41,566 nt of DNA from Guillardia theta CCMP2712 (taxonomy: Eukaryota; Protista; Cryptophyta). The stretch's first letter is position 1; each line of letters starts with the position of its first letter. The notes beneath the pieces were generated by a model that saw only the letters and a list, made by a program, of their open reading frames with translations, was not told where the DNA came from and ran no database searches. Below, piece by piece: positions 374 to 40,850 of this stretch. Position numbers and translations under genes: made by a program. Location: contig NW_005434410.1 of the NCBI RefSeq assembly GCF_000315625.1, positions 1 through 41,566 on the forward strand, read 5' to 3'.

Positions 374-410
<37 letters not shown>
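94..410. repeat. (GAAGGAGAT)n 9-mer (~94-216) and (CAT/CGT)n (~293-410) simple repeats
   Basis: Directly visible. Confidence 0.95.
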
Positions 411-1169
411 TTATCGCCGTCCCCGTCGTCCCCGTCAATCATTTTTACCGTCATCATGAACAAAGACAAAGCAAAAACATAAGAATATCTCAACACAAGC
501 TGACCTGATTGAAATGAATTTGCCGCTAGCACTGTTTGCAAAAATGTAAAATTTCAGCAATGCGCTTTAAAACTTGAGACGATCCGCAGACACAAAATAT
601 TGTAAAGGAGAAACAAAAATTGAAGAAAAGAATAGAGGAAAGAATTGCTCTTGCATGTAAGACATCAAGAAATGAATTCAGGTTCAGAAATCAACACAAA
701 GATATCAGAAGTATTCACAAGATTGCATGTATCCTCCAAAGTTTCCTTACCGGCACGTTGCCGAGCCAATGTTTCCTCTTGTTTGTTCCGACACTCAAGA
801 AATTTCAACTGGGAGGGTTTCAGCTTGACAGAAATTTCTGCAATGATACAAGAACGTCTCACCTTGGCAAGTTTGTAGGTGTTGCAACGTTTCCGGAAAT
901 CAATCTTCATGAGATGATTCAGACGTGTTGATGTTGATGTTGATGTTGATGTTGATGTTGATGTTGATGTTGATGTTGATAATGGTGTTGGTGTTGATGT
1001 TGATGTCGATGTCGATGTTGGTGTTGATGTTGATGTTGATGTTGATGTTGATGTTGGTGTGTACAAGCTCACCTTGAGACAGGACGACAGAAACTCTCTA
1101 GCTTCTTCACTAATGTCTTTAGGAATTTCCGGGTCTTCTTCGATCTGTTTGGAAGCTTTAGACCTTGTT

Positions 1170-1246
<77 letters not shown>

Positions 1247-4200
1247 ACAGGCCATCAATTTCTCGAAAAGCACTTGATGCACGAATTGATTACAGAAACA
1301 CATAGAACGACAAAATAATTTGAGATCAACAAAACCAAATTGAGATATTACGTACGAACTTTGCAAATCACAACATAGAACACAACAAGTCAGAAAGATG
1401 AAATGATTATTCCAGAAGCAGATCATCAGAAGAAAACGACAGAAGACAAACAAGAAGAATCAAGAAGCAGACAACATGAATCAAGTCTACCTGTGAAAGC
1501 CGATACAACTTGTGGACTTTAAGCTGATCATCGCTGTTGTCATCGAACGGGAGCTCCAGGGTGAACATCTCATGTACAATACACCTTTTGATCGAAATTT
1601 TCAACCATTGCGCTCTCAAACATGTCAAACATCACCCGAGACCCCACACATCACTCTGACGGTGAAGCTCTTTTTCTCTCAGCAGCTGTCATGACATGTC
1701 ACGCCAACTCTTCTCGACATGTTCTTCACCTCCGGCGCGATGTACCCGGGAGTTCCTTGGAGGTCACCACGGTAGGTGTCTTTGATATTCAGCGACTGAA
1801 AAGCGCGTGAGATAAGATAGGTAGACAGGTATGAATGAGGGAGACGATGATTTTGTTGTTGATGATAATGGTGGTGGTGGTGGTGGTGGAGGAGGAGGAG
1901 GAGGAGGAGGAGATGATAATGATAATGATAATGATGATGATGGTGCGGATGATGATAGAGATGATGATGGAGATGATGGAGATGATGATGATGATGATGA
2001 TGATGACACTGATGATGATGATATGCATCAATTCAGAAGGACAGAAGGATGAAAATGGCAAAAGGGTGAACGGGTGGAGCAAGACGATTCACCGCTCCGA
2101 AGTCTGCCAATTTCATAATTCCTTCTCGTGATATTAGACAATTTCCACTCTTGACATCCCTACAGCACTGTGAGTCAAGAAGAATGATAGCAGAAGGAGG
2201 ACGAGAGGGAGTGGGAGGGAGGGAGGGAGCAGGTGAAGCAGGTGAAGCAGAGGAAGAGGAGGAGAAGGAGGAAGAGGAGGAAGAGGAGGAAGGCTAAGGA
2301 GCAAAGGGGTGTGGAGGGTTTGAGGGGAGTAAGGAGGAACTAGTACCGATGCATCATCCCATGTCTGTGGAGGTAGGATAATCCCTTTGAAAACGTTTCA
2401 GCAAAGAGGGAGAAAAGAGGGCAAGAGGAGACTACAAGAAACGGCGCAAGTAGGAGGAGGAGGAGGGGAGGAAGAGGAGGAGGAGAAAGAGGGGAGGGGA
2501 GTGAGGGCAAAGGGGAATATCAAGAAGGAGGGAGCAGTGGGTACAGGAGGCTTCGAGGAAGAAGATACCTCGGTGAGATCTCTTGTGAAGGCTCGGATCA
2601 CTTGCTCTTCCAGCTTGCCGGCGACGTCCAGGAGGGATGAGAGACTGTCGCTGAATGAGGGGAGGGAGGAAAGAAAAGACTACATGAAGGGGAAGACAAA
2701 GGAGCTGGAGAGAGAGCGAAAGTTGGGAAGGAGAGGAAAAAAGACAGGAGCAGGAGCAGGAGCAGGAGCAGAGGAAGGGGGAGAAGCTGAAGCAGAAGCA
2801 GAGGGAGGGGGAGAAGCAGTTGGTGGTTGTTGCCCTGGCACTAGAGGTGGGAGGCTTGAACCTTCCAGCTTGACAATATTCCATGACAATGTAGAGCTGA
2901 TCTTGTATGATGTTCGCTCCTTTGTACTTGACGATGTTGGGATGCGACAGGCGCTGAGATCTCCACCATGAGGAGACGAGACCTCCTCCTTCCTCTCCTC
3001 ACTCACCTGGAGAGTTTGTAGCTCGTGCTCGAGCTGAATCAGGTGACTGGATTTGGTCATTCCCTGCTTGCAGGTTGAGACGACAGCACGAGGCATGTGG
3101 AGGAGTTGCCTGAAGGTACGTTGTCTTGATCGCGAACTCTTCCTTGGTCTTCTTGTCGTAGCCCTGAGGATCACGGGGTGAGGTCTGAGAGACTCGAGGC
3201 GGCAGGAAGGAAGTTCGGCAGAAGTTTGAGAAGATCGAAAGAAGTTTGAGAAGTAGTGCAGAAGTTTGAGATGAAGGAAGAACAAAACGTGGATGGCCGT
3301 GAATACGGCAAGAACACGAGGAGCTGACCTTGTAGACGCAACCGTATGTTCCGCTCCCAATCTGCAACATCCAACGTCTCAACGACGGTAGCAGCCCCTC
3401 CCGTTCGATCTCACCATGACGTCCGATTTCCTCCAGGTCTTGATGTTTGATTTCTTGCCAGCGACTTCAAAGAAAATTAAACAATCTGAATACACGGAAG
3501 GAGGAGGAGCAGCAGCAGCAGCAGCAGCAAGGAGGAGGAGGGAAGAAGGAGGAGCCAACACAAGAAAGATGGGTTACACATCACTTTGACACAAGTGATA
3601 TGTAGACCCAAGAACAACATCGTGAATCACTAAAGCTACAACCGTACACTGGCATACAACAGCAACAAACATCCCACGACTTGCCTGTCAGCGAATAGAC
3701 ACTGTCGGAGCGTTTCACAGCCTGCTTCATCGTCTCCACTTCATCACCCACCTGCAAGGAGGAGAGGAAGGAACTTCAGCACGCACCCTGCTGGGCTGTC
3801 CAGGCACTCACGAGAAGCACGAGCGACTTGACTTCATCGTTGTCGAAGTATCCATCGTTCCCTCGGATGAGCTCCTCGCTCACAGTCGCAGAGACTGTTG
3901 GAATGATGCTCTCCTGATTCAGGTTGCTCTCCGGCCCCTTCACCCTCAGCAGCCAGTTCCTCCTTAACGTGGTATACACTCGCGGCAGCACGGCGATGGA
4001 GAACAGTGACAGCCCAGTCTTCCACACAACTCCAACCTGCCGAAGACTCAGAAGCTGCTGAAGTCATTGACCATCTCCTACGTTCTCCTCCATCAGATTG
4101 ATGGTCTTCAGGAAAGTTGCTGCTGTAAAGTCAGAGATCGCTGCCGGAAGCTGCGATTTACAAACCCGAATCCATGTGAAAGACGTGCAGAGTCTGCGAC

Positions 4201-11719: not shown

Positions 11720-14097
11720 TTGCCAAGACCACAGACACCTAAGTATTCGTCAGCTGCAGAACCACTTGAGGAAGAAACAACAACAACAAAACTAACAACG
11801 TTTGCACAAAACTCATACGCATCGTCCAAAATACATTCATCGAAACAAACAGAGGAACACCCGAACAACATGTTGGCAAAGGAACAAGATGTAAACAAGG
11901 TATCGCATCTAAACCATCAGTATGAAAACGAACATAATGAAAACAAGAAGGTGAAGAAGCCGCCAGGCTCTCTCCCCTGCCATCCCTTCTCACAAGTCAT
12001 GACCTCGACGGACATGCTCTCCGACGAGCTGCATCTGCATCAAGACCCCTGGAGCAGCACGTATCGTGCCGTCCTGGGCTGCGAAGAGAAGCTGCGACCA
12101 GTGTGCGTGCAGGTGCTCAGAGCTGACGGAGTGCCGGGAGACTCCAAGGCCGAGGTCGAGGACTTGATCGAGAACCTGGCGGAGGAGGCGGAGAAGATGG
12201 CAGGTCTTTCGCACCCCAACATCGCGCAGGTCGTGGGGTACGCCAAGGACGAGGACGCGAGGATGGGATGCCTCGTCATCGACTGTCACGGAGACGTGGG
12301 GAGCAGGAGCGTGCTGGTAGGGATCAGCTTCCAGGGCAGGCTGATGGACTGCGGGCTCTTCCGACTGAAGAGGGGCGGGAGGTCCACAGGAGGAGCCGCG
12401 GGGAGCGGGAGGGAGGGGGAGCTGCTGGTAGAGCTACTGACGGGGGTCGTGCGAGGAGGGGAGGAGGAGGGCGGGGGGAGGGCGAAGTGGGGAGAGTTGG
12501 GAGGTTTGGGGGAGGGGAGGGAGCTGGAGTGGGACAGCCGTGCAGGATGCTGGGGGGAGGGATGCAAGGAAGGGATGATGGGGGTGCTTGAGAGCTGCTG
12601 GAGGAGGAACAAGGGCCCGGGAGACACGCTCGCAGCCGTGTCGTCGAGGATGCGAGGGGTTGAGAGGAAGTACTGCCAGCCAACGAGGGAGGAGGCGCTG
12701 CTGCGGCAGATGGAGGAGGCGAGGGAGGAGCTGGAGAAGCTCAAGCTTGAGGGAGAGAGGAGGAGGCTACAGGGGAGGGTGAGGGCGGGGGAGTGTCTGG
12801 TGTGTCTGGAGGAGGCGGAGGAGGGAGTGGTGTGCTCGTCGTCGGCTCACTTCATCTGCTCGGAGTGTCTCCCGCAGGAAGTGGGGCGAGTGCTGGAGCT
12901 GGCAGAGACGGAGGGGGGCATCAGGCGAGGTTCGGGGAGAGGAAGGGGAAGATCGCCTGCGTAGCTCCAGGATGCGGGGGCGTGTACACGGACAAGGACC
13001 TGGCGGGGGCGCTGACGGCGGAGAAGTTCGAGAGGCTGATGGAGTGCCGGAGGAGGAGCATGAGGAGCGAGGTGTTTGCGGAGGTGATGGGGAGGATGAA
13101 GGACCTGAAGCTGGAGGGGGAGGAGGCCGCGACGAGGGAGCTGATCCGGCTGCAGCATCCGGATGCCCTGCAGTGTCCGAGGTGTCATACGGGGCCGGTG
13201 CTCCCGGAGGGATGCTCCGACCTTGGTATGCACCACCAGGAATGGTTCAAAGGAGCAATGTTCAGCAACGCGTGCAGGGCTTGCGGCTTCTTCGATCGCG
13301 ACCGGAACAACTGGGAGAAGTGGGATGGGAGGATGACAGGGCAGAGGGAGCAGGGGAGGCAGGGGGGAGCAGCAGCAGCAGCAGCAGGGGCATTTGGAAG
13401 GACACAGCTCAGGACAAGGCTGAAAAGGAGAGTCGTCATTAGGCATGATTCAACAGAAGAAGAGGATGAGGAGCAAGATGAGGACCAGGACTGGTACGAC
13501 GTTGTGAATGAGATCATTGAGCAAGAGTTGCATGGGGGATTGTATGACGACGGCGACGACGACGGAGACAGCGACGACGACGGAGATGAAGACGATAACC
13601 ACAACGACAACGACAACGACGAAGACGGATACAGCGACGACAACGGAGACGGCAACGACGATGGAGACGGATACGGAGACGACAACCACAAAGACAACAA
13701 CTACGAAAGAGAAGGAGAAGGAGATGAAGACGAAGACAGCGATGACAACAAAGGAGACGACAACGATGACAGAGACGAAAATGAGGACGATGACCACAAA
13801 GACAGCGACGACGGCGACGACACAGACGGAGACGACGACGAGGACAGTACCGACAACGAAGACAGTACAGTCGACGAAGACAGTACCGACGATGACGGAC
13901 CTGAACAAGAGCAGGATGGTCGTCCTGCAGTTCTAGGAGGTGCAACTCAGCCTGTTCCTGTTCGTCAAGAGCAAGACCATCCTCAGATTATAGGGGTGTG
14001 CAAATCGACCGGCCAGGTCTGCAAGAACTGCCTGAACGACAGAGGATGCCGATGGGCGTATCAACCAGACAAGTGGCCGGGACATGTGTCATGGTAA
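11720..14097 (+). CDS. Pelle/RLK-like pseudokinase + coiled coil + RING/RBR-like Zn fingers + acidic tract + C-terminal Cys4 module (copy A; one apparent frameshift, two in-frame deletions)
   Basis: ORFs 11720..12964 and 12793..14097 join if the G6 run at 12913-12918 has one more G (ETEGGHQARFGERKGKIAC). Motifs: LSHPNIAQVVGY, HGDVGSRSVLV, RLMDCGL, CLVC..CSSSAHFICSEC..CVAPGC, CPRCHTGPV..GCSDLGMHH..NACRACGFF..WEKWDG. First ATG at 11870. Confidence 0.75.
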
Positions 14098-17000
14098 AAT
14101 ATGAGCATGAGAGGCGGTGGGTGAGGATGTTCTTGTTACTTACTAAAGGCCACAAACACCATTGTGACTGTGCTCGATGAAGAAATGACATCTCGTCGAT
14201 GGAAATAACAATCTTGTTGAGACAAGGGAAGCATCTGGTCGTTTTCTTCCTCCTCCCGCTCTCCCGCTCCCTTCGGTCCCATCCCCTCGCTCGCTTCGCT
14301 TGTCCTACCTGCATGCGCGTAACAGACCCGGGCGCATTGGAGTTGTCCAAGAGCTCCACGTTCATTATTGTTTTAATCCATCGTGGTACAAAAATAATTG
14401 TTAAAAACCAACAAGGTCTGGTTCATTTTACAAATACAGTAATAACTTTTCTATGAAAACAATGTATAACTTTATATTTTTGTACTGCACAAGAGAATGA
14501 AGTATATTTATAGACATCCGCATTATTGCGTTTCCTAATCGCCGCCATGGCAGGCCCAGTGATCAGACGAGGGGAGGGGATGCAGAGGTGGCGGCAGGGA
14601 GAAGATGGCTAGTGAGGAGCTCCTTGTACGCTGAGAGTCGTGCCATTGTGGAGATGTATTTTGAGCTGTTGGGAAGCGAGCTAGTTAGAGTCGCCCGGAG
14701 GTTTATCTGCCGATTGCATATACAGTATAACGACAATGCACTGAGAGTTGTGTTGGAATTGCAGAGGTCTCACAGATGGTTTCATTTCGTGTGTCTTTGA
14801 AGGGTTGCGGCCCTCATTCGGTGATGTTATCAGTGTGAAGATGTATACGACATAGATTATCATGAAAGTAGAAGATGTTCCCTGACTCACTCGCAGAAAA
14901 CATTGAGCGCAAGGATGAAGAGGATCAGGTTTGCTTGCAAACCATGCATTGATGCAAGACAGAAGTGTGACAGCTTCCAGCCATGCGCGAGGTGAGGAGA
15001 GAGGGAGAGAGTATGCTTCTGTCTATGCCATGCTCGTGCAGATGATGATGATAATGATGATAACGGTGACGATGTCGAATATGATGATGCTGAGGGAGGG
15101 GAGGGGAGAATGCTTACAGTTGCGTATCATGTCTTGTGGCATGTGGTCGCTTGCGGCTGCGTATCATGTCTTGTGGCATGTGGTCGCTTGCGGATGCGTA
15201 TCTTGTCGAGTCACTGAGTGGTGTCGCTGCCTTCGCCTGCTGTAGTCTCGAGCGTGTCTCGGGCTCTTGCATCTTCTTGCCAGCTGCTGATTGACGTGTG
15301 AGTCAATGGTGACGGTTGTTGTCATGGGGGTGCAGGTGCGTCAAGCACAACATGGCAGGGCGTTGCGTGAGACTGAGAGAGACGAAGCCCTCGAGGACCA
15401 GGAGCTTGGTCGCGTGCGTTGTGTGCAAGAGATCCAAGGTCAAGTGCGACGAGGGCCGACCCTGCTCCGCTGCAGGCGTCTGGAGAAAGCGGAGCAGTGC
15501 GTGTACGAAGACATGGAGCTGATAGTCACGGACGACGGGATGCGAGAGGTGGAGCAAGCAGACCTTGCACTGGCGCATGAGAGGAGGCGGATGGGAGAGC
15601 TGCGGGTGGAGAGACCGCTAGACTTCTGGATCCGAAGCGTGTCGTTCGACAAGCCGTCAGCGCTGCGGGAGCAGATGAACTCGATGGGGTGGCCGGATCG
15701 CGTGCTGGCGAGGCACTGGGAGTTCGGCTTCAGCGCGAAGGAGCTCATGAAAATCTTTGTCTGTCTTCCTCCCTACCTGCAGCAGGTAACGCGACGAGCG
15801 CTGCATGCGGTAGAGATCATCATGGCAGACAAGATCGAGAAGCAGAGTCGGAGAGTGGAGGACCACCTGCTGATGGGGGGAGGCGAGACGGAAGTGAAGC
15901 CAGACTTGGAGGTAGACCGAGCATTCTACGACCAGCAGACCTTTGGGTTGATCAAGCAGCATCTGCATCCGTCGACGGGGCAGCGGGCCCATGTGTTTGT
16001 CTCGGACAAGACATGCAAGCTAGTCGGGCTACATGTGGAGGAGATGCTGGCGAGGTTAGCGAACAGAGAGCTGTCACTAATGAGCACGGAGTTTTCCTAC
16101 TTCTGCTACGTGATGTTCGGCACCTGGTCCTTCGCAGTCAGGCCGGGGCAGCCGATGACTTTGTTGTTAAGACTTCGAAATTTCAGCAACGAGATGGGGG
16201 CAGGGTGTGCGTTCACACGGGTAATTCAGCAGCAGGAGTTCGATAGCTACGGCAGGGTGAAGGCTATGAAGACATTCCTTGTACCGGTGAGTCAGGAGGG
16301 GAGAGGAGAACACAGGCAGCTGGAGAGGCGCTGATCTAACACTTGCTGCGGGGCAGGTGGAGCGGGGGGAGTACGAGTCAGCTGTGATGCCGTGGGAGGG
16401 TTCGAGTACGAGAATACAGATGCACTTGAACGCTGGACGAGACTACGAGGCATGGAAGAGCGACTTCGTGTCAGACTTGTACGCGGTGAGAATGGAGAGG
16501 GGTGGAAGGGGAAGGGAGAGGGGAGAGCTTTGGGCGCCAACGTGCTGATGGGAGATGTGGTGGCTGCAGGACGAGACGATCATTGGCATGCAGAAGTCGA
16601 GGGAAGGGATGCAGCGGCTGTACGCACTAGCGGAGGATCTTGAGAGGATGTACCAGCCGTTCCTGGAGCTGGCGGAGAAGATCCTGCATGAGAGGATGGG
16701 GCAAGAGACTGGGAGACCGTGGGTGGGAAGCGACTGCAATGCGATGGGGGGGGAGAGAGAGGAGAGGAGGACAGAGGTGTGAGAAGCTGCTGGTTGTTTG
16801 TCTCGTGGTTGTGTCATGATGAGTTTGTGCAATATCTGTTTATTCTCTACGTCAACCTGGTTCTTAGTACATTTGTAGCTCAGAGGCGTCCAGGCTCCCC
16901 ACTTCAGGCCCCGGATCTCAGTCTACCGGGGTTAAAAACCACTACATGAACCCGGGGCCCGATGGGCCGTGACGGGCTGAAGACGATCGCACTGGATGAC

Positions 17001-17314
17001 CGGGGATACCTAGAGGCCCGGACTCGGCCTGGGAGGGCAGCTGGGCTGACCGAAGAGCCGAGCAGCCGGCGGAGGCAGTCAAAGTACCTGATACTCAGAT
17101 GTGCCCGGGCCTGCCTTGCCCGGCCCACCGACACCTCCGGTTGGTGGAGCAGAGCTGGCAGGCCCGGCCAGTAGTGACGCAGGCCCCGATGATGCCCCGG
17201 CGCTGAGCCCGAGCAGCCGGCTGAGCGTCAGGCACGCGACCCATAGGAGGCATGAAGAGATACTCCACGTCCACTTCTCTCCTCCAAGCAGGCACTGGCC
17301 CTGACAAGCCCTCA

Positions 17315-17364
<50 letters not shown>

Positions 17365-18396
17365 AGAAGCTGTAGCTGTCGGCGCCCCCTGCCTCCCCTC
17401 GCTCCCTCCTGCCCTGTCATCCTCCCATCCCACTTCTCCCAGTTGTTCCGGTCGCGATCGNNNNNNNNNNNNNNNNNNNNNNNNNNNNNNNNNNNNNNNN
17501 NNNNNNNNNNNNNNNNNNNNNNNNNNNNNNNNNNNNNNNNNNNNNNNNNNNNNNNNNNNNACCCCCATCATCCCTTCCTTGCATCCCTCCCCCCCAGCAT
17601 CCTGCACGGCCTGTCCCACTCCAGCTCCCTCCCCTCCCCCAAACCTCCCCACTCTCCCACTTCGCCCTCCCCCGCCCTCCTCCTCCCCTCCTCGCACGAC
17701 CCCCGTCAGTAGCTCTACCAGCAGCTCTCCTAGAGCCCTCACCTCTGCCTCCTCGTCGTACTCCTCTCCTCCTCTGCCCTTCAGCCTCCCTCCCCCTCGC
17801 CCTTCCGTCCCACTCCCCGCGGCTCCTCCTGTGGACCTCCCGCCCCTCTTCAGTCGGAAGAGCCCGCAGTCCATCAGCCTGCAGTGGAAGCTGATCCCTA
17901 CCAGCACGCTCCTGCTCCCCACGTCTCCGTGCAGACTCCCGCCCGCTCCTTCCCCGTGGAGGTAGCTTAGCGCCCCCACCAGCCCCGCTGCCTCCCGCAC
18001 TCGAAGCCTCCACGTGAAGCTCTCCGACTCCTTGTCGCTCCTCAGCACCTCCTCCAGCAGCCCTCTCCCGCACGGCCAGTCGATGATGAGGCATCCCATC
18101 CTCGCGTCCTCGTCCTTGGCGTACCCCACGACCTGCGCGATGTTGGGGTGCGAAAGACCTGCCATCTTCTCCGCCTCCTCCGCCAGGTTCTCGATCAAGT
18201 CCTCGACCTCGGCCTTGGAGTCTCCCGGCACTCCGTCAGCTCTGAGCACCTGCACGCACACTGGTCGCAGCTTCTCTTCGCAGCCCAGGACGGCACGATA
18301 TGTGCTGCTCCAGGGGTCTTGACGCAGAAGCAGCTCGTCGGAGAGCATGTCCGTCGAGGTCATGACTTGTGAGAAGGGATGGCAGGGGAGAGAGCC
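11964..18396. repeat. Long inverted duplication: arms ~11964-13390 (+) and ~17320-18396 (-)
   Basis: ggctctctcccctgccatcccttctcacaagtcatgacctcgacggacatgctctccgacgagct at ~11966 is the reverse complement of ~18331-18396. Similarity continues to the (GCA)n tract in both arms. Confidence 0.92.
14605..16782 (+). CDS. Transcription factor with two tandem Zn(II)2Cys6 binuclear clusters (apparent 1-nt frameshift in cluster 2)
   Basis: Cluster 1 CKPCIDARQKCDSFQPCAR|CVKHNMAGRC spans intron 14992-15335. Cluster 2 CVVCKRSKVKCDEGRPCS(R)CRRLEKAEQC needs +1 nt at ~15467. Then a long exon to ~16287 and two further exons ending at TGA 16782. Start is either 14605 (spliced) or 14915. Confidence 0.82.
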
Positions 18397-18498
18397 TGCG
18401 ATATGCTTCTTGTCTTTATCCTCCTCCTCCACCACCACCACCTCCTCCTCCTCCTCCTCACCATCATCATCATCGCCTACTCCGCAACGTCTCGGCAT
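17095..18498 (-). CDS. Pelle/RLK-like pseudokinase-RING/RBR-like gene, inverted copy B (middle hidden in N-gap)
   Basis: Nearly identical to copy A from GSLPCHPFSQVMTSTDML onward. Retains FTWRLRVREAAGLVGALSYLH. Resumes after the gap at the RDRNNWEKWDG-coding sequence and ends GACVTTGRACQLCSTNRRCRWAGQGRPGHI. Frameshifts in G-rich sequence beside the gap. Confidence 0.72.
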
Positions 18499-22806: not shown

Positions 22807-25800
22807 ATGCGCCTTCTCCTCTTTTCCCTCCTTCTCTTCAGCTCCCTCCCCATGAGCGTGACGATCGAGCTGTATCCGGAGCTGCTCGGTCTTGCTACTC
22901 CCAGCTCGTGGGTGTCTGCCTCGGGCTGCATTGACCATTCTGAATGTAAGCAAAACGAGTTCTGCAAGATTACCTGGTGCAACTCCTGGGAAGGATGGTT
23001 CTACAAGTGCGGAAACTGCGTCCCGTGCTCCCAGTGCCTCTGCAACGAAGACAGCATCACGCAGGCCTGCCCCTCTGACAGGTGCCCCGCTCAGCCTGCC
23101 GAGTCCGTACGCTACCTGCAGGGCAGGTTCAGCAGCACGCATCCGATACCTGGAACCAACTACTCGTGCGTGTTCGCCATTAAGTTCGAGGGCCTGCTGT
23201 TCGAGCACGTGCAAGTCGCTGTAGAGAACAGGAGCAACGTCGTCACCCCCACCACCATCCCTGTCGCGACATGCGCGAGGTTTCAGGGCAAGGGGATATT
23301 CAACCTGTCCCAGACGAGCCTCTCCTTCTTTTACACGGAAGGTAAGGCGATCCCCTCCTCTCCTCGCAAGCATGCTCTTGTCCTCTCCCCTCCTCTTGAG
23401 CATGCTCTCGTCCTGTCCTGTCCTCCCGAGCAGTTGCTTGACTGACTGGCTGACGTCTGCTCAGGGGACTACAAACCCTTCCAATGGCACAAGGGTAGCT
23501 TCTGGAACAACTGCTCCGCTGGTTTCAGAATCTTCCTCACAAGCCCTACCGGCCTCCCTCTCAACTACTCGCTCACCCCCGCCCCTGGAACGAGAGCTGC
23601 ATGGCATGACGCCAGCGTGCAGCCTGTGTTGGGGAGCGCAGGAGCGATCGTCGGGACGTGGAAGTCGCGAGCGCTCTTCGAGGGGACGTACTGCGAGCTA
23701 GTCACTGAGATACTCCCCCTGCAGGGTTCCAACTTCCACCAGCACAACTTCCACCTGCTGAACTGCAGCTCAACCAAGCGCGGCTTCACTCTCACTAAGG
23801 TCGGCAGAGACCCTCCAGCTGGTAAGAGTACGGCAAGGAAGCTGTTGAGCGAGGGTGGCAGCACCAACGGAGACGCTGGGGCCGCAGGGGGGATGGAGAG
23901 CAAGAGCAGGAAGGGGGTAGAGGGAGGAAGAGATCCTGATGCATCAAGGTCGAGCGTGCAGCTACGAGCGACCACCACGATGCCAGTCGAAGTGATCGAG
24001 GCGGCGGCAGAGGCAGGAGGAGGGAACGTAACGTCAGGAGCGATCCAGGTCAGCACGCCAACTTCCTCCTCCCCTGTCTACAGGACGTGGCTGATCAAAC
24101 CGACAAGCTCGCCTAGACTAATCGGTGAGAAATTGATGCGGCATCTGCCTCCTCCTCTGATCCTTCCCTCCTCCAGCTCTTCAGATCTCCATGACAGGGT
24201 CGCTCTTGGCTTCGGACTACATCAACATCTCTGCTGCCCTTCCTGCGGCTCTCAACGCCGACCTCTCTTGGTCCACGACCCTCCTTCCTGGTGTTCAGTG
24301 CGGGACACCTTGCACTTCGCAAGCTACAAGTGCCTACCCAACCTTCTGCAGAGTTCAGACCTGCAGGAAGGTAGCATACAGTCGGGGGCTTTCCAAGGCT
24401 TTCCTCACGAGCTCCAACTTCAAGAACGGTCAGATCGTGAACGTCACATATAGGGCTACAAACCTGGAAGAGGCTGACATCGGGCTGCTGATCCAATCTC
24501 TCGTCTCCAGCCCTTCAGCTAGTTTCACCTTCACCTTCACAGCCTACTCCAAGAACGCCGTCTGCCAGATCGGCCAGTATACTGAGCCGTCCAAGCTGGG
24601 TCTGCGGTGGACCATTCCCCCGTACCTCACCAAGAGCCTTGCAGAGGCGTGGGTTGTTGACTACGTCAACCAGACCTCGGCCACGTTCTGGTCGGACTGC
24701 AGCGACTGTGCGCAAGGCAACACGACCTTGTACTTTGCGGACAACGGCGGGGAGCAGGCATGCGGGACAATCTGCCCGGCAGGGATGTACTCGGCAACTG
24801 GGTTGAACCCTTGCTTAGACTGTCCTGTTGGGACTTACCAACCTGTGCGCGCTGGAACCAAGTGCATGCCCTGCCCCTCCTCCTACTCGACGGCAGACAA
24901 GAACGCGATCTCCCGCGACCAGTGCTTCTATGCCATCGTGCTGCTGGAGAGAGTGTGGAGGAGCGGGCAGATACTCAAGTTCGTGGTCTACTGGCAGTTC
25001 ACCACCAACATCGCGTTCCCTCCCAACAAGGTCTCCATCTACAAGGACGGCAGACAGCTCGCCTGGTTTTCGACTGTCCTCTACCCTGACCCTGCTCCAA
25101 GTGGCTACAGCGGGTCCAACACCCTCGAGTCAGAGTCGGCCGGCCTCGGCAACTACACGCTGCTGCTCTATAGCTCCATGGACAACTTCTCGAACCCGGC
25201 GATCAACGTGGCGGGAGGCGCCATCGTCGCGTCGTACACCTTCCTCATCCAGAACGAGATCCTCACCGACTCCTGTCTCGGCAGCGACCCCCTCACCTGC
25301 ATCCCAGCTGACGTCGGCAAGAGCATCAACTCCTCCGGCGTCCTATGTTCCAGCGGCTACCTTGCCCGCATCCTCAACCTCCGCTTCTGCCCCCCCTGCT
25401 CCCCTGGGAACGCTGGTGTGCTCTTCTGCGCCCCCTGCCCTGTCGGCTTCTACGCTGACACCGCGGGCCTCTCGAGCTGCACCCCCTGCCCCGTCATCAA
25501 CGGCATTCCCTATGCCACCGCCTTCGAGGGCGCTGGGGCCTCTTGCTCGGGTCAGGCATGCTGCCAGCCCTGCCCAACTCTCATCCAGCTGGGCTTCAAC
25601 CCTATCCAGTGCCGGCAGAACACAGCACAGGCCACGACGGCAGCCCCGACAACGGCAGCCCCGACGACGAGGCCTGTCACGACCACGACCCGAGCTGCAG
25701 TAATCGAGACTACCGAGATTGCTACGACTCCTGCTCCAACCACCACCGCAGTGCTCGCCACCCCAGCGCCGGTCGCCTTCTGCGGGGACGGGGTGAGGCA

Positions 25801-28800
25801 GGAGAGGGAGACGGGCTGCTGGTCGGCAGCGTATGGGGGGATGAGACTCTGCGAGGATCCGGCGATCATGCTGGGGAACGACCTGAGGTGGCACTTGAGG
25901 GAGGAGTGTGACGACGGGAACAGGATCGATGGCGACGGCTGCTCGGCCAACTGCACGGTTGAGCTGGGGTTCGGCTGCTTTGGAAGCTCGCCGGATGTTT
26001 GCAGGTATCCGACCAGGAGCGACCAGTTCCTGACCATGGCGGCGCTGCTGGGCAGCTTGTCCGGGATCTCCTCAGCTGAGACCGTGCTGGCCAACACGAC
26101 GGATGTGGGGAGGCTTAACTTGCACCTCTTCGAGATGCTGGGGTTGCAGGCGACCTTTCGAGCGATCTACCAGACGTCCTTGCAAGATCGGCTCACCAAC
26201 GAGGCCGCAAACGTGGCCCTGAACCCCTTCGGCTGCCCCTGCCAGCAGGGGTACCAGGAGATCATGGAGCAAAGCGGGAGGGTGGGGGTCCCAGCTGGGG
26301 TCTTCGTGAACTCCGGCAGATGCCAGTGGCGGGTCGCCCCGGTCAACGCGAGCACAGTCACCCTCTACCTCCAACACCACATGAGGAAGGTTGAACTGCT
26401 GATGCTGCGACGTCCTGCCTTGTGCTCTTGCTCTCCCTCGCTCCCCTACTTCCTCTCGCTCCCACCTCCCTCCCTTCTCCTGCTCCCTCCCTCTCCTCTC
26501 TTCCTGATCTCCCCCACCCCTGACTCCACCCGCTTTCCTTCCTCCCCTTGCTATCTCCCCGCCCCCCCCCCCCCCGTCCTCCCTCCCTGTCTCCGCTGCT
26601 CTGCTCTCCTCGCTGACGCCTTGTGTGTACCTTCAGAACGAGTGGCTGGAGATCATGGACAGCGGTATCTACCCCCAAGACCAGCAGGTCCCCAGCAGCA
26701 ACTGCTACCCCTGCAAATTCGTGGGCAAGTCCAACGTGTCAGCAGTCACAGTCCACGTGATTACCTTCTCCCTCCACCTGCGACTGACTCCTGACGGCCG
26801 ATGGCAGGTCGGTAGCTTCTTCACTGCCACCTTCTACTACAGCGAGATGAAGGAGGTGGAGCAGCGGTACTCGTGGGAGGACGTGTTCAACCTGACCTTC
26901 TTCGCCAACGGCACCAGCTCGTTCCCCGACACGCTCCCCTACCTCCTCGAGGCGGTGCGGGAGGCTGCTGACGTCAACATGACCAACACTTCTGGTCAGC
27001 CTCCTCCCCCAGCTACGACCCCACCAGACTCGCTGGTCATGAAAGTCGGGGAGGCGGTAGATAGCTGGACTTACCCCTGCCAGTTCGGCAGTACCAATGG
27101 GACGCAGCCACTGGGGGTGACCGAGTTTCTGTTCCGGCGGCACGAGGACAGCTGGGAGGATTTCACGGGGGAGTGGGAGGGGCAGACGTACGCGGACGGG
27201 AACAGGGACGGCCTGTTTGACAACGTCGGGAGGGTGAGGTGTGGTGAGGTCGGGTTTATCAGACAGCAAGATCAAGTGTACCAGCCCGATCACTGCATGA
27301 CGCTGTGCGTTCAGGATGCTGCCTGCTCGTTCGCAAGCTACAACGACAAGTTCTTCACCTGCATCCTCCTCCGCTCCTGCCAGCTGGAACCGTCGTTCAA
27401 CGCGCAGGACCCCATCATCTACAAGAAGAAAGAGGGGGTCCACAACCTGCTGTGCATGCTCAAGGTCTCTGTGGTGGGCCTTCGAATCTCGGTGCACGTG
27501 CATGGATGCGACGGCAAGGAGGATGGAGTGCGGAGGAGCGCGCACGAGGGCTGGGCGACGGGATACATCTTCCCCCTGCCGGTGAGGAAGAGGAGGGTTG
27601 GGAGCAGGAGCAGGAGCAGGAGCAGAAGCAGGGGCAGGGGCAGGAGAAGGAGCAGTAGCAGTAGCAGTAGCAGTAGCAGGAGCAGGAGCAGAAGCAGGAG
27701 CAGTAGCAGTAGCAGGGGCAGGGGCAGAAGCAGGAGCGGGAGCAGGAGCGGGAGCGGGAGCAGAGGGAGCTATGGTGGAAGAAGAGCTAGAGATGGAGAG
27801 AGGAGAGGCGGAGAGGAGAGGCAGGGAGGAGAGGCTGACAACGACGACAGGACGGAGCCACTCCTTGCAACCAGGGAAGGGACCCCATCCCCTGCCGTTT
27901 CATCGACCCGATCTCGAAGTTCCAGTACTGGGGCTACGTGCCCTTCAGCATTGTGTTCTCCTCCTCCTCCTCCATCTTGGCGGTCGGGGACGTGTACAAT
28001 GCCATCCTGACCCGCTCGCTCAACGACGTCATTGACGTCTTCCAGCTGTCTGTATCGAGGGAGTGGCAGCTGCAGATCTACATGCCCCTCTCCCTCGTCA
28101 ACTCCCAGAACTACCCGCAGGTCAACAACGTCCTCTTCCCCTTCGTCCAGCAGCCCTCCAATGCCACCCTATGGAACCTTAAGCCCACATCAGCGGTGAG
28201 GGTGGGAGGAGGGTGGAGGGTGGAGGGAGGAGGGAGGAGGGAGGAGGAGGGTAAAGGGGGTAAGGAGGACAAGGCCGAAGGTGGACTCGTGAAGCGAGAC
28301 AAGGGAGAAGAGAGGGAAGTAGTAGGATGAGGATACTGGGTGTTTGGAGGAGGGAGGAGGGAGGAGGGAGGAGGGAGGAGGGAGGAGGGAGAGGAGGACC
28401 AGGAGGGAGGAGGGAGAGGAGGACCAGGAAGAGGAGGAGGAGGAGGACTAGGAAGAGGAGGAGGAGGACCAGGAAGAGGAGGAGGAGGACTAGCAAGAGG
28501 AGGAGGAGGACCAGGAAGAGGAGGAGGAGGACCAGGAAGAGGAGGAGGAAGGCTCAGTGCTGACGGGAGGGAGCAGGCGGAATTAAGGTTCCAAGTGCAG
28601 GAGATCGATCAGAAGGGTTTCCTGCAGCAGCTCAACGTCTACAGGACCTGCAACGACTCCTTATCGACCCTCCGCCAGTTCGCCAGCAGGACTCCGGACT
28701 GCCTCCTCATCTTCTCCAGCATCTTCCGAGCTGACGGGACCATCGGGCCCAGCAGGGTCGACTCGGCAACCATGGACAAGATATGTCAGAGCTCCTGCTA

Positions 28801-31497: not shown

Positions 31498-36039
<4,542 letters not shown>

Positions 36040-37525: not shown

Positions 37526-37865
37526 TTCATAATTGCTTGCACGCGTATTTCCCATCTGCTCAGAGTGCCACTGGATTCACTTCTTAACGAGCCAAACCCT
37601 GCACGAAGGCTAATCGACTCTCCTTCTCCCACTCTCAGCACCAGCACAAAGGCCGCTGAGCCTGTGATCCAATCCCAACTTCTGCTGCTGGCATTTCCTC
37701 CCGCCCTGGGCAGATCAGCAGGCGGGACTAACTCGAATCTCAACAGATGCCGGTCCATGGACGAGCTTTGGATTAATTCCTTGACAGCTTTCCAATCAAA
37801 TTCATGCACGCTGCTGAGACGCTTGCATCGCCCGTTAGCTTGAACCTCTGATCACCTTGTCAACA

Positions 37866-40850
37866 ATGCGGCAAAGGGATCAGGTCTTTGCCAACCACGG
37901 CATCCCTCTACTGTGCGAGGAGGCAGACGAGCTTGCGTTTCGACTGCAGTACAACAGGTACCACAAGAAGACCATTGAAAGGATCATGCTTGGTACCTCG
38001 TGTACATATAGTATGTTTGCAGTGAGCTTGCTGTTAAGTGCCGAATGTCGAGCACAGAGTTTTCTCTGTCTTGCACAAGCATTCTTGTTTTCCGCCAATT
38101 CGATCCTCTGTATTTTATTCTTTGCAGGGCTGGCCTTGCCGTCCTTTGAGCCTTACGTCAACCGCAGCAGAAACAAAGACATCCTCTTCACAGTCTGGAA
38201 CACCCTGGCGTTCATGTTGGAGATCGCTCGGAAAACCATAGCGGACCTCCGGAGATCTGAGACCCCCATGATGCTCTCTCCGCACGTGAACATGACGATT
38301 GACTACTTGCATGGCGTCCCTTGGACTTGGAGCTGCTCGGACTCCAACCCAGTGGACACAGCTTGGAAGCACCATACTGTGTTCTCCTTTGAGGACGCGC
38401 AATGTACAAGTCGACTGCTGACCAACGAAAGCATTTCTGTCTTCCTCTTCGTCGGATTTTTCATCCCCCTGACGGCGGGGATCGATGGCCAGTCGGCCGC
38501 ATGGCTGTGCGTGACGGAGGTCTTGTCGTACGTGCTGAGTGGACTGTGTGTTGGCCATGAGCTGGGCTCGATGGTGCACGTGGTTGTTCTGCTTGGCACC
38601 TTCACCCTCGCAAACATCCTGATCTGCAACTCGAGGATCAGTGCGGCTCGAGAGCGGTTCATGCGCGAGAAGGGCCTGAAGGCTTCGACGGCGCAGACCC
38701 TCCAGCTGCTCTGCACCATGATCCCGAGGTCCCTACACACCAAGTTGAAGCATGAGAAGCAGAAGCTGTTTGTCGGCAACACGATGGATCACTGCACTAT
38801 CATGCACCTCAGGATCTCTCCCGCGGCATCGGAGGACGTGTCACGGCGGCCTCACGACGTGTTCAACCTCGTCGACAAGGTCTTCTCGGACTTCGACTCG
38901 CTCGTCGACGCCTTCGGCATGTTCAAACACTACCACTCAGAGGACGTCTACGTCGTGGCTTGTCCGCGTGCTGCGTGTCCCTTCCAGGCCCCTGTCAACC
39001 ATGCGGCGTACGTGTCGATCTCGGCCAAGAAGATGATCATCCTTGCTCAGCAGCTGATCGAGCGCTCGAAGCTCTACCGCTCCCCGTCGGGAGAGGTGCT
39101 ATGGGCCAAGGTCGGGATCCATGTGGGGGAGGTGGCGGGTGCGGTGATCGGCCACCAGAGGAGGTTCTACTCGCTGTTCGGCAGCACTATCCATGACTGT
39201 CGGAGGCTCTGCGACGCGAGCGAGGCGGGGCGGATCCTCTGCTCAGAGCAGCTGGTGGAAATCCTCAGGAAGGACGTGAGCACCTGCCTCATCTATCACA
39301 GGAGTGAGGCTGGTGAGAGCCAGCTGGGGTCGGCGTACTTTGTGGAGGTGGACGAGGAGAACTCGCTGGACCTGGATCCTGAGTCGCTGTACTCCTCCTC
39401 GACCTCCAACATCCCTCGCCGAGAGGAGGAGCACCCCATGTCGCTGCAGACCGCCTCCAGCGCCTCCAACGCCACGACATCGTCGGGAAACGCGATGGAT
39501 GCAGAAACAAGCGTGTCGGATGCCAGCAACTCCAACACGACCTGGAGGATTTTCTTGCAGGAGGATCAAGAGGAGGACCTTGTCGAGAAAAGCAAGAGGA
39601 GCAGGGAGGCCCTCCATCACGTCAACTCGACCTGGTGCGAGTTCGCCGACGTGGCAACGGAGGCGAGCTTCCTGGAGAGCCGAGCCATGAACGTGTTCAC
39701 CCGCACCCTCATCGGCATCTTCTGCAACAGCGTTGTCTTCCTCTCCTCTCTTCACGCCCTCAAGGACCTCAGGATCTTGCAGGTGGAGGAGTACCGCCAC
39801 GTCAGCTGGAGGATCTCCTTCATGCAGTTTGCGGGCTTTTCTGTTCAGCTGATGATTCTTCTCTGCGGCCTCGTGGCCTACTTCAGCCACCTCCGCTTCT
39901 TCCACTCCGGGTCGGTCAAGACTGCCGCGAGCCTCCACTCGTGTGTTGTGTTCTGGCAACGCGCTCTCGTCCTCTGCAACTTCGTCTTCCTCGCAGCTCT
40001 GGTCCTCTGCGGCATCTGGATCAACACGACGGGATCTTGCCTCCTCTTCTTCCCGGTGTTCAGTGCCAGCAACCTCCTCCAAGCTGGGTGCCAGCTGAAG
40101 GAGCACACCATCATCATGCTGATCACGACCGGGCTGACCGTTGTGCTGATCTACTGCTGGATCCCCGGCATGTCCCTTGTCGCCATCATCTTCACCTACT
40201 TCGTCCTCTACATGAGCAACAGGGCGCTCAAGGAGTTCAACTGGGTGGAGAGGGAGCAGTGGAGCGCGTCCCAGCTGATCAGCGCAGAGAACAAGGCCAT
40301 CCTGCACATCCTCAACGACCTGTTCCCTCCCGACATCGCGCACGAGATCGTCAGCACAGGAAGGATCACCACCAGACTCCGCAGGGCCGTCGTCCTCGTC
40401 CTCGACATCTCCTGTTTCTCCCAGCTGACTGCCCAGCTGACCCCCTTGCAGGCAGCTGAGCTCTTTCACCTCCTCTTCTCCCGCCTCGACAGCGTCGCCT
40501 CCTCCTTCCGAGCTGCCTTCAAGGTTGACTCGCACAACGAGACGTACAGCTGTGCCGCCTGGGCGAAGCCGGGGGAGGAGCAGAGCATGTGCAAGAGGAT
40601 GGAGACGATGGGGAGGAGGATGGTGGCGGAGGTCATGGAGGTGGCGAGGGAGAAGAAGGTTGATCTGCATGCCACCGTCGGCATCGCCATGGGAGGGTGT
40701 GTAGCTGGAGCGATAGGAAGGCTCCAGCAGCGATACCAGCTGAAGGGAGAGGCGATGGAGGAGGCGAGGCGGCTGCAGGCGTGTGCGGGGAGAAACGAGG
40801 TCAGGATGGGGGAGGCGGTGAAGAAGTTGGTAGGGGAGAACGAAATGTAA
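37866..40850 (+). CDS. Membrane class III nucleotidyl cyclase-like protein (TM block-C1-TM block-C2), degenerate active site
   Basis: Uninterrupted ~994-aa ORF with two hydrophobic helical clusters. Cyclase motifs LVDKVFSDFDSLV..KVGIHVGEVAGAVIG..YSLFGST and VLVLDISCFS..LFSRLD..VGIAMGGCVAGAIG..YQLKGEA. An upstream exon cannot be excluded. Confidence 0.88.
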   Translation: MRQRDQVFANHGIPLLCEEADELAFRLQYNRYHKKTIERIMLGTSCTYSMFAVSLLLSAECRAQSFLCLAQAFLFSANSILCILFFAGLALPSFEPYVNRSRNKDILFTVWNTLAFMLEIARKTIADLRRSETPMMLSPHVNMTIDYLHGVPWTWSCSDSNPVDTAWKHHTVFSFEDAQCTSRLLTNESISVFLFVGFFIPLTAGIDGQSAAWLCVTEVLSYVLSGLCVGHELGSMVHVVVLLGTFTLANILICNSRISAARERFMREKGLKASTAQTLQLLCTMIPRSLHTKLKHEKQKLFVGNTMDHCTIMHLRISPAASEDVSRRPHDVFNLVDKVFSDFDSLVDAFGMFKHYHSEDVYVVACPRAACPFQAPVNHAAYVSISAKKMIILAQQLIERSKLYRSPSGEVLWAKVGIHVGEVAGAVIGHQRRFYSLFGSTIHDCRRLCDASEAGRILCSEQLVEILRKDVSTCLIYHRSEAGESQLGSAYFVEVDEENSLDLDPESLYSSSTSNIPRREEEHPMSLQTASSASNATTSSGNAMDAETSVSDASNSNTTWRIFLQEDQEEDLVEKSKRSREALHHVNSTWCEFADVATEASFLESRAMNVFTRTLIGIFCNSVVFLSSLHALKDLRILQVEEYRHVSWRISFMQFAGFSVQLMILLCGLVAYFSHLRFFHSGSVKTAASLHSCVVFWQRALVLCNFVFLAALVLCGIWINTTGSCLLFFPVFSASNLLQAGCQLKEHTIIMLITTGLTVVLIYCWIPGMSLVAIIFTYFVLYMSNRALKEFNWVEREQWSASQLISAENKAILHILNDLFPPDIAHEIVSTGRITTRLRRAVVLVLDISCFSQLTAQLTPLQAAELFHLLFSRLDSVASSFRAAFKVDSHNETYSCAAWAKPGEEQSMCKRMETMGRRMVAEVMEVAREKKVDLHATVGIAMGGCVAGAIGRLQQRYQLKGEAMEEARRLQACAGRNEVRMGEAVKKLVGENEM

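What the first reader, a model, noticed from the sequence alone, without database searches (positions are those of the whole stretch)
11720..18498. Pelle/IRAK-like pseudokinase fused to an RBR-like E3 module
Seen: the kinase fold has FTWRLRVREAAGLVGALSYLH (copy B), which resembles the RLK/Pelle LxWxxRxxIAxxxAxGLxYLH motif. The Gly loop is missing, VAVK reads VCVQ, HRDxKxxN reads HGDVGSRS and DFG reads DCG. After a coiled coil come a RING1-like finger and, with no obvious IBR between, a CPxC..GCSDL..HH..CxxC module whose GC Cys sits where the RBR catalytic Cys would be. Established: Pelle/IRAK/RLCK kinases act with E3 ligases in innate immunity, and pseudokinases such as ZED1 and IRAK-M act as decoys or scaffolds. 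Inference: a one-polypeptide pseudokinase-sensor/ubiquitin-ligase, possibly an undescribed algal defence or stress module.
Basis: partly seen in the sequence, partly recalled or inferred. Interest (0 to 1): 0.72.

Follow-up and report, generated by a model that had tools for sequence, protein, structure and literature searches.

The report
Dead kinase fused to RBR-derived ligase
Two inverted copies of a Guillardia theta gene join a catalytically dead IRAK/Pelle-like kinase to a parkin-type RING finger and a small one-zinc domain that looks like a cut-down RBR catalytic domain; this ligase unit is widespread in protists but undescribed, and neither copy can be read intact in this assembly.

Summary
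The window is a whole scaffold of Guillardia theta CCMP2712.

- **Copy B** (minus strand, 18498-17095) has the complete kinase-like domain. Its ligase part lies in the N gap.
- **Copy A** (plus strand, 11870-14097, public model GUITHDRAFT_149006) has the ligase part. It lacks 48 and 23 codons of the kinase and has a 1-nt frameshift inside RING1.

**Kinase.** Its nearest solved relatives are plant RLK/RLCK and IRAK1/4. The Gly loop, the beta-3 Lys and the catalytic-loop Lys and Asn are lost. DCG is normal for this family, not decay.

**First finger.** It is a parkin-type RING1, followed by a helical hairpin and no IBR.

**Second module.** It is a one-zinc domain. Its first knuckle and an invariant spare Cys align with the Rcat of a canonical paralog (hhalign probability 87%). 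Fold searches gave no significant match.

**Family.** RING1 + hairpin + module finds 1359 cluster representatives, among them oomycetes, dinoflagellates and cryptophytes. About a third of the long ones carry a kinase.

Nothing points to a defence role. Expression could not be tested.

The parts
11870..14097 (+). Copy A, public model GUITHDRAFT_149006. Two reading frames: 11870-12964 and 12793-14097.
11966..12670 (+). Copy A kinase-like remnant. V-C-V-Q at 12101-12112, H-G-D... at 12287-12310, D-C-G at 12347-12355. In-frame deletions relative to B at about 12285 (144 nt) and about 12418 (69 nt). It keeps the family motif D-x-R-A-G-x-W at 12533-12553.
12686..12781 (+). Charged helical (coiled-coil-like) linker between the kinase and RING1
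   Evidence: the same position in relatives
12794..12975 (+). Parkin-type RING1. Ligands 1-6 at 12794-12868 are in the kinase frame. Ligands 7-8 at 12958-12975 are in the other frame.
12913..12918 (+). Run of six G where the frame changes inside RING1. The public model hides this with a 41-nt GT..AG 'intron' that removes RING1 ligand 7.
12991..13155 (+). Helical hairpin that replaces the IBR. Model helices are residues 18-24, 27-57 and 61-72 of the piece that starts at 12940.
   Evidence: pLDDT 91
13174..13329 (+). One-zinc Rcat-like module. Knuckle 1 at 13174-13185, invariant spare Cys at 13213-13215, invariant His at 13231-13233, knuckle 2 at 13273-13284, W-x-x-W-D-G at 13312-13329.
13330..13986 (+). 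Copy A tail: short poly-Ala, then about 150 codons of D/E/N-rich low-complexity sequence. Copy B has no counterpart.
13987..14097 (+). C-terminal four-Cys motif and stop. It is shared with copy B and with a third gene on contig C78.
17561..18498 (-). Copy B, N-terminal part: acidic N-terminus and the complete pseudokinase domain. About 17690-17600 reads out of frame relative to copy A and the family (four single-G indels).
17461..17560 (.). Assembly gap. It stands for the equivalent of A 12586-13292 (about 707 nt). Frame continuity across it is undefined.
17095..17460 (-). Copy B after the gap. 17460-17409 is the end of the zinc module and is identical to A 13293-13344. Then come two extra G, a poly-Ala repeat, and the C-terminal four-Cys motif at 17193-17098 in a different frame.

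Best explanation
The locus holds two inverted paralogs of one G. theta gene. Their core, from the kinase to the zinc module, is 96-100% identical block by block (99% over the longest block), while the N- and C-terminal tails have diverged. The gene belongs to a large, undescribed protist family of ubiquitin ligases derived from RBR ligases. The family's unit is a parkin-type RING1, a helical hairpin in place of the IBR, and a C-terminal one-zinc domain. That domain keeps the first zinc knuckle of Rcat and, ten residues after it, an invariant cysteine that zinc does not need, followed by an invariant histidine.

Proposed mechanism, inferred and not shown: RING1 binds E2~ubiquitin, ubiquitin passes to the spare cysteine as a thioester, and from there it goes to a substrate.

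In many relatives an active-looking RLK/Pelle/IRAK-type kinase sits upstream on the same chain. In this gene that kinase has lost its Gly loop, beta-3 Lys and catalytic-loop Lys and Asn. It can therefore only act as a docking or regulatory pseudokinase.

Copy A is damaged (two in-frame deletions and a frameshift). Copy B is probably the better copy, but its ligase part is unassembled.
For: - Organism and public model.
- Inverted copies and their differences.
- Kinase class: the best PDB matches of copy B are a plant lectin RLK (E 5e-10), PBL2, IRAK4/1, BIK1 and BRI1. For paralog L008, all 53 PDB matches below 1e-20 are RLK, RLCK or IRAK.
- Catalytic residues lost against a family alignment that keeps them.
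- RING1: the family profile hits parkin RING1 at E 1.6e-5. The window's frame-2 piece matches the first half of the family RING1 at 95.8% probability, E 7.5e-9.
- No IBR: the AlphaFold model has pLDDT 91 and a helical hairpin.
- Module: 12 invariant columns in 75 sequences, including the spare Cys and the His.
- Homology chain: family versus the L008 ligase part at 98.2% probability, E 5e-14. The L008 C-terminus matches ARIH2 RING2 at E 4.9e-4. Its family profile matches the CUL9 Rcat at E 0.0068. Module profile versus that Rcat profile gives 87% probability, E 4e-6, over the knuckle, nine residues and the Cys.
- Same kinase type on both ligase types: the L008 kinase versus the Aphanomyces P0010 kinase, E 7.7e-78.
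- Family size: 1359 representatives at E<=1e-3.
- Kinase fusions: 22 of 65 long representatives carry Pkinase.
- Transcripts that carry both parts.
Against: - Fold searches do not place the module with Rcat. The best Foldseek hit is parkin at E 0.44 with TM 0.25. The VIA-align best is Z 2.1. The Atlas top row is RNF216 at TM 0.42.
- The profile match to Rcat covers only 22 columns, and the second zinc site of Rcat is absent.
- No thioester chemistry has been shown for any family member.
- Neither copy is readable as one intact ORF.
- No ortholog of the pseudokinase part was found, and no transcript-derived protein of this gene appeared in the protein searches.
Confidence: 0.6

Rival explanations
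1. Both copies are decaying pseudogenes of a kinase-ligase gene. The degenerate kinase motifs, deletions, frameshifts and low-complexity tails are erosion, and no protein is made.
For: - Copy A has two deletions in the kinase core and a frameshift in RING1.
- Copy B reads out of frame over about 30 codons of the C-lobe and again after the zinc module.
- No ortholog of the pseudokinase was found.
- No transcript-derived protein was found.
- The activation segment is replaced by G/R-rich low-complexity sequence.
Against: - Copy A keeps all 12 invariant residues of the zinc module and all eight RING1 ligands.
- Both copies keep the C-terminal four-Cys motif at the protein level although the tails have diverged (53% identity). 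This argues for past selection on both.
- All single-base indels of copy B lie within about 130 nt of the gap, where read quality is usually poor.
- The one frameshift of copy A lies in a run of six G.
Confidence: 0.3
2. The C-terminal zinc module is not catalytic. The protein is an ordinary RING ligase in which RING1 promotes direct transfer from the E2, and the zinc ribbon binds ubiquitin, substrate or nucleic acid.
For: - There is no significant structural match to Rcat. The nearest VIA-align matches are a rubredoxin and an anti-CRISPR protein at Z about 2.
- Only one zinc site is present.
- The similarity to Rcat is limited to 22 columns.
Against: - An invariant Cys and an invariant His are not needed for the single four-Cys zinc site.
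- The Cys has exactly the knuckle-to-Cys spacing of the canonical Rcat in paralog L008, and it sits in the same place of an otherwise collinear kinase-RING1-hairpin architecture.
- From established knowledge: parkin-type RING1 domains work with a downstream catalytic Cys and do not activate the E2 directly.
Confidence: 0.3
3. The damage is an assembly artefact. Reads of two near-identical inverted copies were collapsed into copy A, leaving a gap in B. The frameshift and the single-base indels are consensus errors, and at least one intact gene exists.
For: - The part missing from B exists only once in the assembly.
- The B indels lie in G runs next to both gap edges.
- The A frameshift lies in a run of six G.
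Against: - The 144-nt and 69-nt differences are clean in-frame deletions inside otherwise well-matched sequence. They are hard to explain as base-calling errors.
- No read data could be examined.
Confidence: 0.35

Closest known systems
RBR ubiquitin ligases (parkin, ARIH1/2, HOIP, RNF216, CUL9)
   Same: The RING1 is detectably homologous to parkin RING1. A downstream zinc knuckle is followed by a Cys at the Rcat spacing. A paralog in the same genome (L008) has the same layout with a canonical Rcat.
   Different: There is no IBR; a helical hairpin takes its place. The C-terminal domain has one zinc site instead of two. After the Cys the sequence is unrelated to Rcat: a conserved D-L, H-H-G, then N-x-C-x-x-C-x-F-F and W-x-x-W-D-G. 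No significant fold match was found.
RLK/Pelle/IRAK kinases, including pseudokinase members such as IRAK-M and ZED1 (these names are from general knowledge)
   Same: The nearest solved relatives are RLK, RLCK and IRAK. The alpha-E/catalytic-loop signature resembles the RLK/Pelle motif. Catalytic residues are lost, as in known pseudokinases.
   Different: There is no death domain and no receptor ectodomain. The domain is fused in cis to a ligase. The relatives use D-C-G in place of D-F-G. Placement by a phylogeny was not tested.
Kinase-ligase partnerships: IRAK/Pelle with Pellino, PINK1 with parkin, and plant KEG with kinase and RING on one chain (general knowledge)
   Same: A Ser/Thr kinase is functionally coupled to a ubiquitin ligase. 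KEG also combines both on one polypeptide.
   Different: Pellino and parkin are separate proteins from their kinases. KEG has a plain RING-HC N-terminal to its kinase and no Rcat-like domain. No functional data exist for the present family.
G. theta paralogs L002/L003 (receptor-like: Ephrin_rec_like repeats, a membrane span, then the same ligase unit) and L004 (CCCH fingers plus the same unit)
   Same: They share the RING1-hairpin-one-zinc unit.
   Different: Their N-terminal domains differ and none has a kinase. Their open reading frames are intact.

Membership tests
Protein kinase superfamily, RLK/Pelle/IRAK family (TKL group) | Protein-kinase domain detectable by profile | tested here: met
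   Copy B: PF07714 at E 6.6e-11, 42.4 bits against a cutoff of 23.1. Copy A alone falls below the threshold (15.6 bits).
Protein kinase superfamily, RLK/Pelle/IRAK family (TKL group) | Closest relatives are RLK/Pelle/IRAK rather than other kinase families | tested here: met
   PDB ranking for copy B: lectin RLK, PBL2, IRAK4/1, BIK1 and BRI1 come ahead of Aurora, MLKL, LIMK and RIPK1. For paralog L008, all 53 matches below 1e-20 are RLK, RLCK or IRAK.
Protein kinase superfamily, RLK/Pelle/IRAK family (TKL group) | Monophyly with RLK/Pelle/IRAK in a kinase-domain phylogeny | not tested
   No reference kinase sequences could be obtained. Only rankings of best hits were available.
Active protein kinase | Gly-rich loop, beta-3 Lys, catalytic-loop Asp/Lys/Asn, and the Asp of DFG | tested here: not met
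   Aligned with 14 relatives that keep these residues. The Gly loop is lost, Lys is replaced by Gln, H-R-D reads H-G-D, the catalytic-loop Lys is Gly and the Asn is Ser. Both Asp residues are retained. D-C-G is the family norm.
RBR (RING-between-RING) E3 ligases | RING1 of the RBR type | tested here: met
   Family profile versus parkin RING1, E 1.6e-5. zf-RING_14 scores 32 bits against a cutoff of 26.6 in L004. The window pieces align to both halves of the family RING1.
RBR (RING-between-RING) E3 ligases | IBR domain between RING1 and RING2 | tested here: not met
   There are no Cys or His ligands between RING1 ligand 8 and the module. The AlphaFold model shows a helical hairpin at pLDDT 91. 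Pfam finds no IBR.
RBR (RING-between-RING) E3 ligases | Rcat/RING2: a two-zinc domain with a catalytic Cys after the first knuckle | tested here: inconclusive
   The first knuckle and the Cys align to the canonical Rcat profile of the L008 family (87% probability, E 4e-6, 22 columns). The second zinc site is absent. Fold searches are not significant.
RBR (RING-between-RING) E3 ligases | Ubiquitin thioester on the Rcat Cys | not testable with these tools
   This needs biochemistry.
   Copy A carries the 12 invariant columns of the 75-sequence alignment and both RING1 halves, but a frameshift lies between ligands 6 and 7.

The most novel reading that the evidence does not exclude
The RING1-hairpin-one-zinc unit is a new, minimal class of cysteine-relay ubiquitin ligase. 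It would derive from RBR ligases by loss of the IBR and of half of Rcat. It is often wired in cis to IRAK/Pelle-type kinases or pseudokinases across oomycetes, dinoflagellates and cryptophytes. That would make it a single-chain counterpart of the kinase-ligase pairs of animal and plant innate immunity.
Probability: 0.4. Interest if true: 0.75.

Novelty: new variant of a known kind. Interest (0 to 1): 0.55.

Why it matters
RBR ligases are defined by the RING1-IBR-Rcat triad. This family would relax that definition if the spare Cys is catalytic. It has more than a thousand sequence clusters. It keeps RING1 and only the first knuckle plus the active-site-like Cys of Rcat, and it has no Pfam model for the C-terminal domain. 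It would give a very small catalytic domain to study.

Its frequent fusion to IRAK/Pelle-like kinases in protists bears on how kinase-ligase signalling pairs arose. For this locus the practical points are narrower. The public gene model hides a frameshift with a false intron that removes a zinc ligand. The better copy is interrupted by an assembly gap.

Tried and rejected
No reads were laid, and I did not try the step by any other route. Expression, the frameshift and the gap are therefore untested.
- Foldseek and VIA-align on the 137-aa model were dominated by the helical hairpin. The module folded alone gave no significant match.
- The Atlas feature search suggested giant-virus and haptophyte clusters at score 0.87, which is only a lead. 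A scan of viral contigs confirmed no viral relative (one search failed for lack of a conserved stretch). I dropped the viral lead.
- Literature searches found no description of this unit or of kinase-RBR fusions in protists. The Phytophthora kinome paper (PMC3019232) lists IRAK-like TKLs but no RING fusion.
- Alignment A2 contained a piece of the window in the wrong frame. I redid it.
I obtained the coordinates instead from a ruler print of the translations.
I searched the pieces apart and used the public model P0001 only by its id.
- I considered that the 144-nt and 69-nt segments of B might be introns. I rejected this because they encode conserved kinase core motifs and lack GT..AG ends.


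Full report
**What is in the sequence**

The window is a complete 41.6-kb scaffold of Guillardia theta CCMP2712. The plus-strand gene is the public model GUITHDRAFT_149006 (P0001, 728 aa). The finding covers two inverted copies of one gene, separated by about 3 kb.

Copy A runs from 11870 to 14097 on the plus strand. It occupies two reading frames, 11870-12964 and 12793-14097. Copy B runs from 18498 to 17095 on the minus strand and is interrupted by 100 N at 17461-17560.

The shared core is 96-100% identical block by block, 99% over the longest 322-nt block. It spans A 11964-12585 against B 18398-17561, and A 13293-13344 against B 17460-17409. The N-terminal tails are unrelated. The C-terminal tails have diverged but end in the same four-Cys motif (53% protein identity). 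This is the pattern expected of an old duplication whose core was recently homogenised, or of partly collapsed reads.

**The gap, tested first**

The flanks of the gap in B align to A 12585 and A 13293. The gap therefore stands for about 707 nt. That stretch encodes the end of the kinase C-lobe, the coiled coil, RING1, the linker and most of the second zinc module.

The 467-aa ORF that reads through the N run is meaningless. After the gap the ORF frame is not the frame of the zinc module. No other contig of the 87-Mb assembly holds a second copy of the missing stretch.

All four single-G indels that put B out of frame over about 30 codons (about 17690-17600) lie within about 130 nt of the gap. 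So do the two extra G just after the gap. Poor read ends are a real possibility there.

**Damage in copy A**

Relative to B, copy A lacks 144 nt (B 18076-17932). Copy A also lacks 69 nt (B 17799-17731, in the activation segment and towards alpha-F). Both deletions are in frame.

Copy A also changes frame inside a run of six G at 12913-12918.
- The frame-2 piece upstream aligns to the first half of the family RING1 (95.8% probability, E 7.5e-9).
- The frame-1 piece downstream starts with the last Cys pair of RING1.
- The break is therefore a 1-nt shift between RING1 ligands 6 and 7, not an intron.

The public model bridges the break with a 41-nt GT..AG 'intron' that deletes ligand 7. I searched the pieces apart.

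**The kinase**

Copy B matches PF07714 at E 6.6e-11. Its best solved relatives are a plant lectin receptor kinase (E 5e-10), PBL2, IRAK4, IRAK1, BIK1 and BRI1. These rank ahead of Aurora, MLKL, LIMK and RIPK1.

The intact G. theta paralog L008 (810 aa) gives only RLK, RLCK and IRAK among its 53 PDB matches below 1e-20.

I aligned copy B with L008 and 13 kinase-bearing relatives from oomycetes, dinoflagellates and environmental data. The relatives keep the Gly loop, V-A-V-K, H-R-D-x-K-x-x-N and G-T-P-G-Y-M-C-P. All of them have D-C-G. The window copies differ as follows:
- the Gly loop is lost;
- the beta-3 Lys is replaced by Gln;
- H-R-D reads H-G-D;
- the catalytic-loop Lys is replaced by Gly and the Asn by Ser;
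- the P+1/APE region is replaced by G/R-rich low-complexity sequence.

The pseudokinase call therefore holds, but D-C-G is not part of the evidence for it. I could not build a phylogeny because no reference sequences were available. No ortholog of the pseudokinase part was found by the word-based search.

**The ligase part**

A search of the genome itself found three paralogs that carry the same second module behind a RING: L002, L003 and L004. A Logan protein, P0002, carries kinase, RING and module together.

*RING1.* A five-sequence profile of RING1 + linker + module matches parkin RING1 at E 1.6e-5 and nothing else significant. Pfam zf-RING_14, the parkin RING1 model, passes its threshold in L004.

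*Family size and partners.* The same profile finds 1359 cluster representatives at E<=1e-3 in the 1.84-billion-protein library, and 633 at E<=1e-10. Named members come from Aphanomyces astaci (one is annotated as a TKL protein kinase), Pythium insidiosum, Polarella glacialis, Apocalathium, Amphidinium and Hanusia phi. Of 65 representatives of 430 aa or more, 22 carry Pkinase. Others carry UBA, Arm, CCCH, ankyrin, NYN or PDZ domains. At least 15 of the hits, excluding the query genome's own sequences, have kinases clearly similar to that of L008 (E down to 7.7e-78). MMETSP transcripts carry kinase and module on one mRNA.

*No IBR.* In the AlphaFold model of the window piece 12940-13350 (pLDDT 91), RING1's last Cys pair is followed by a helical hairpin and then the small zinc module.

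**Is the second module an Rcat?**

In 75 aligned sequences the invariant columns are these:
- the two Cys of a C-P-x-C knuckle;
- a G-P pair;
- a Cys ten residues after the knuckle;
- a Leu;
- a His six residues after that Cys;
- an Asn;
- the two Cys of a second knuckle;
- two Trp.

Four Cys suffice for one zinc. The spare Cys and the His are too few to build a second site.

Paralog L008 has the same kinase-coil-RING1-hairpin layout but ends in a canonical Rcat. It matches ARIH2 RING2 at E 4.9e-4. Its family profile A7 matches the CUL9 Rcat at E 0.0068. Some A7 members also have a Pfam IBR.

The family profile aligns to the L008 ligase part at 98.2% probability (E 5e-14), running through the knuckle and the Cys. 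Module-only versus Rcat-only profiles give 87% probability (E 4e-6) over 22 columns: knuckle, nine residues, Cys, x, x, Leu. Beyond that point the sequences are unrelated.

The structure searches do not confirm the relationship.
- Foldseek: the best hit is parkin at E 0.44. On the longer model the best hit is HOIL-1L at E 2.7.
- VIA-align: Z no higher than 2.1, to a rubredoxin and an anti-CRISPR protein.
- Atlas shape search: the top row is RNF216 at TM 0.42, and three of the top four rows are RBR ligases.

I read the module as an Rcat derivative that kept the first zinc knuckle and the active-site loop and replaced the rest. I put about 60% on homology and about 50% on a catalytic Cys.

**Mechanism**

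Shown:
- the domain order;
- the conservation pattern;
- homology of RING1;
- loss of kinase catalytic residues.

Inferred: RING1 recruits E2~ubiquitin, ubiquitin is relayed through the spare Cys with the His as base, and the kinase, or here the pseudokinase, supplies regulation or substrate docking in cis. Nothing in the data points to defence or stress.

**Status of the locus**

Neither copy can be read as one ORF. Two points favour past function. The ligase part of A keeps every invariant residue, and both copies keep the C-terminal motif despite divergent tails. Four points count against present function: the deletions in A, the frameshifts, the lack of orthologs, and the lack of transcript-derived proteins.

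**Earlier notes of this scan**

Note s1-433804, on another gene of this genome (the L002/L003 type), reached the same reading of the ligase unit. I arrived at mine from my own searches before I saw it. Note s1-446757 mentions a further kinase-ligase gene, which I did not check.

**Verdict**

This is a new variant of a known kind. Interest 0.55.

Noticed in passing
window 13987-14094 (+), 17193-17098 (-); L016 1111-2010 (G000:C78): A C-terminal four-Cys motif that ends in R-W-A ... P-G-H closes both copies and also an unrelated 299-aa proline-repeat protein on contig C78. Its match to copy A's motif is 56% identical at E 1.5e-6, and by eye it is closer still to copy B's. It may be a small zinc knuckle or a C-terminal signal. 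Pfam has no match.
   Followed up: partly
window 15291-16334 (+), especially 15316-15522: A Zn(2)-Cys(6) binuclear-cluster-like ORF lies between the two inverted copies (Pfam Zn_clus E 7.3e-5, 23.2 bits against a cutoff of 21). The cluster motif appears split over two frames, so there is a short intron or a frameshift.
   Followed up: partly
window 12929-12969: The public model GUITHDRAFT_149006 places a 41-nt GT..AG intron here. It hides a 1-nt frameshift and deletes the seventh zinc ligand of RING1. The model is probably wrong.
   Followed up: yes
window 11964-13344 versus 18398-17409: The core of the two copies is 96-100% identical block by block, while the N- and C-terminal tails are unrelated or only 53% identical. 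This suggests gene conversion between inverted paralogs, or collapsed reads.
   Followed up: partly
L008 (G000:C33), ORF 406-2838 (-): An intact 810-aa paralog with an active-looking RLK/IRAK-type kinase, RING1, a hairpin and a canonical Rcat but no IBR. Hanusia phi has a 75% identical ortholog. Diatom relatives of its Rcat carry CCCH, RRM, RING1 and IBR domains. It looks like an intermediate between classical RBR ligases and the one-zinc family.
   Followed up: partly
L002 and L003 (G000:C103, C60): Two similar receptor-like genes: Cys-rich Ephrin_rec_like-type repeats, one membrane span, then the same RING1-hairpin-module unit.
   Followed up: no
window 24191-26794, 26625-28010, 32297-33538, 37857-40850: Ordinary neighbouring ORFs: Ephrin_rec_like repeats, a PAN domain, Gpi1, and an adenylate/guanylate cyclase domain. 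There is no sign of transposons around the locus.
   Followed up: no
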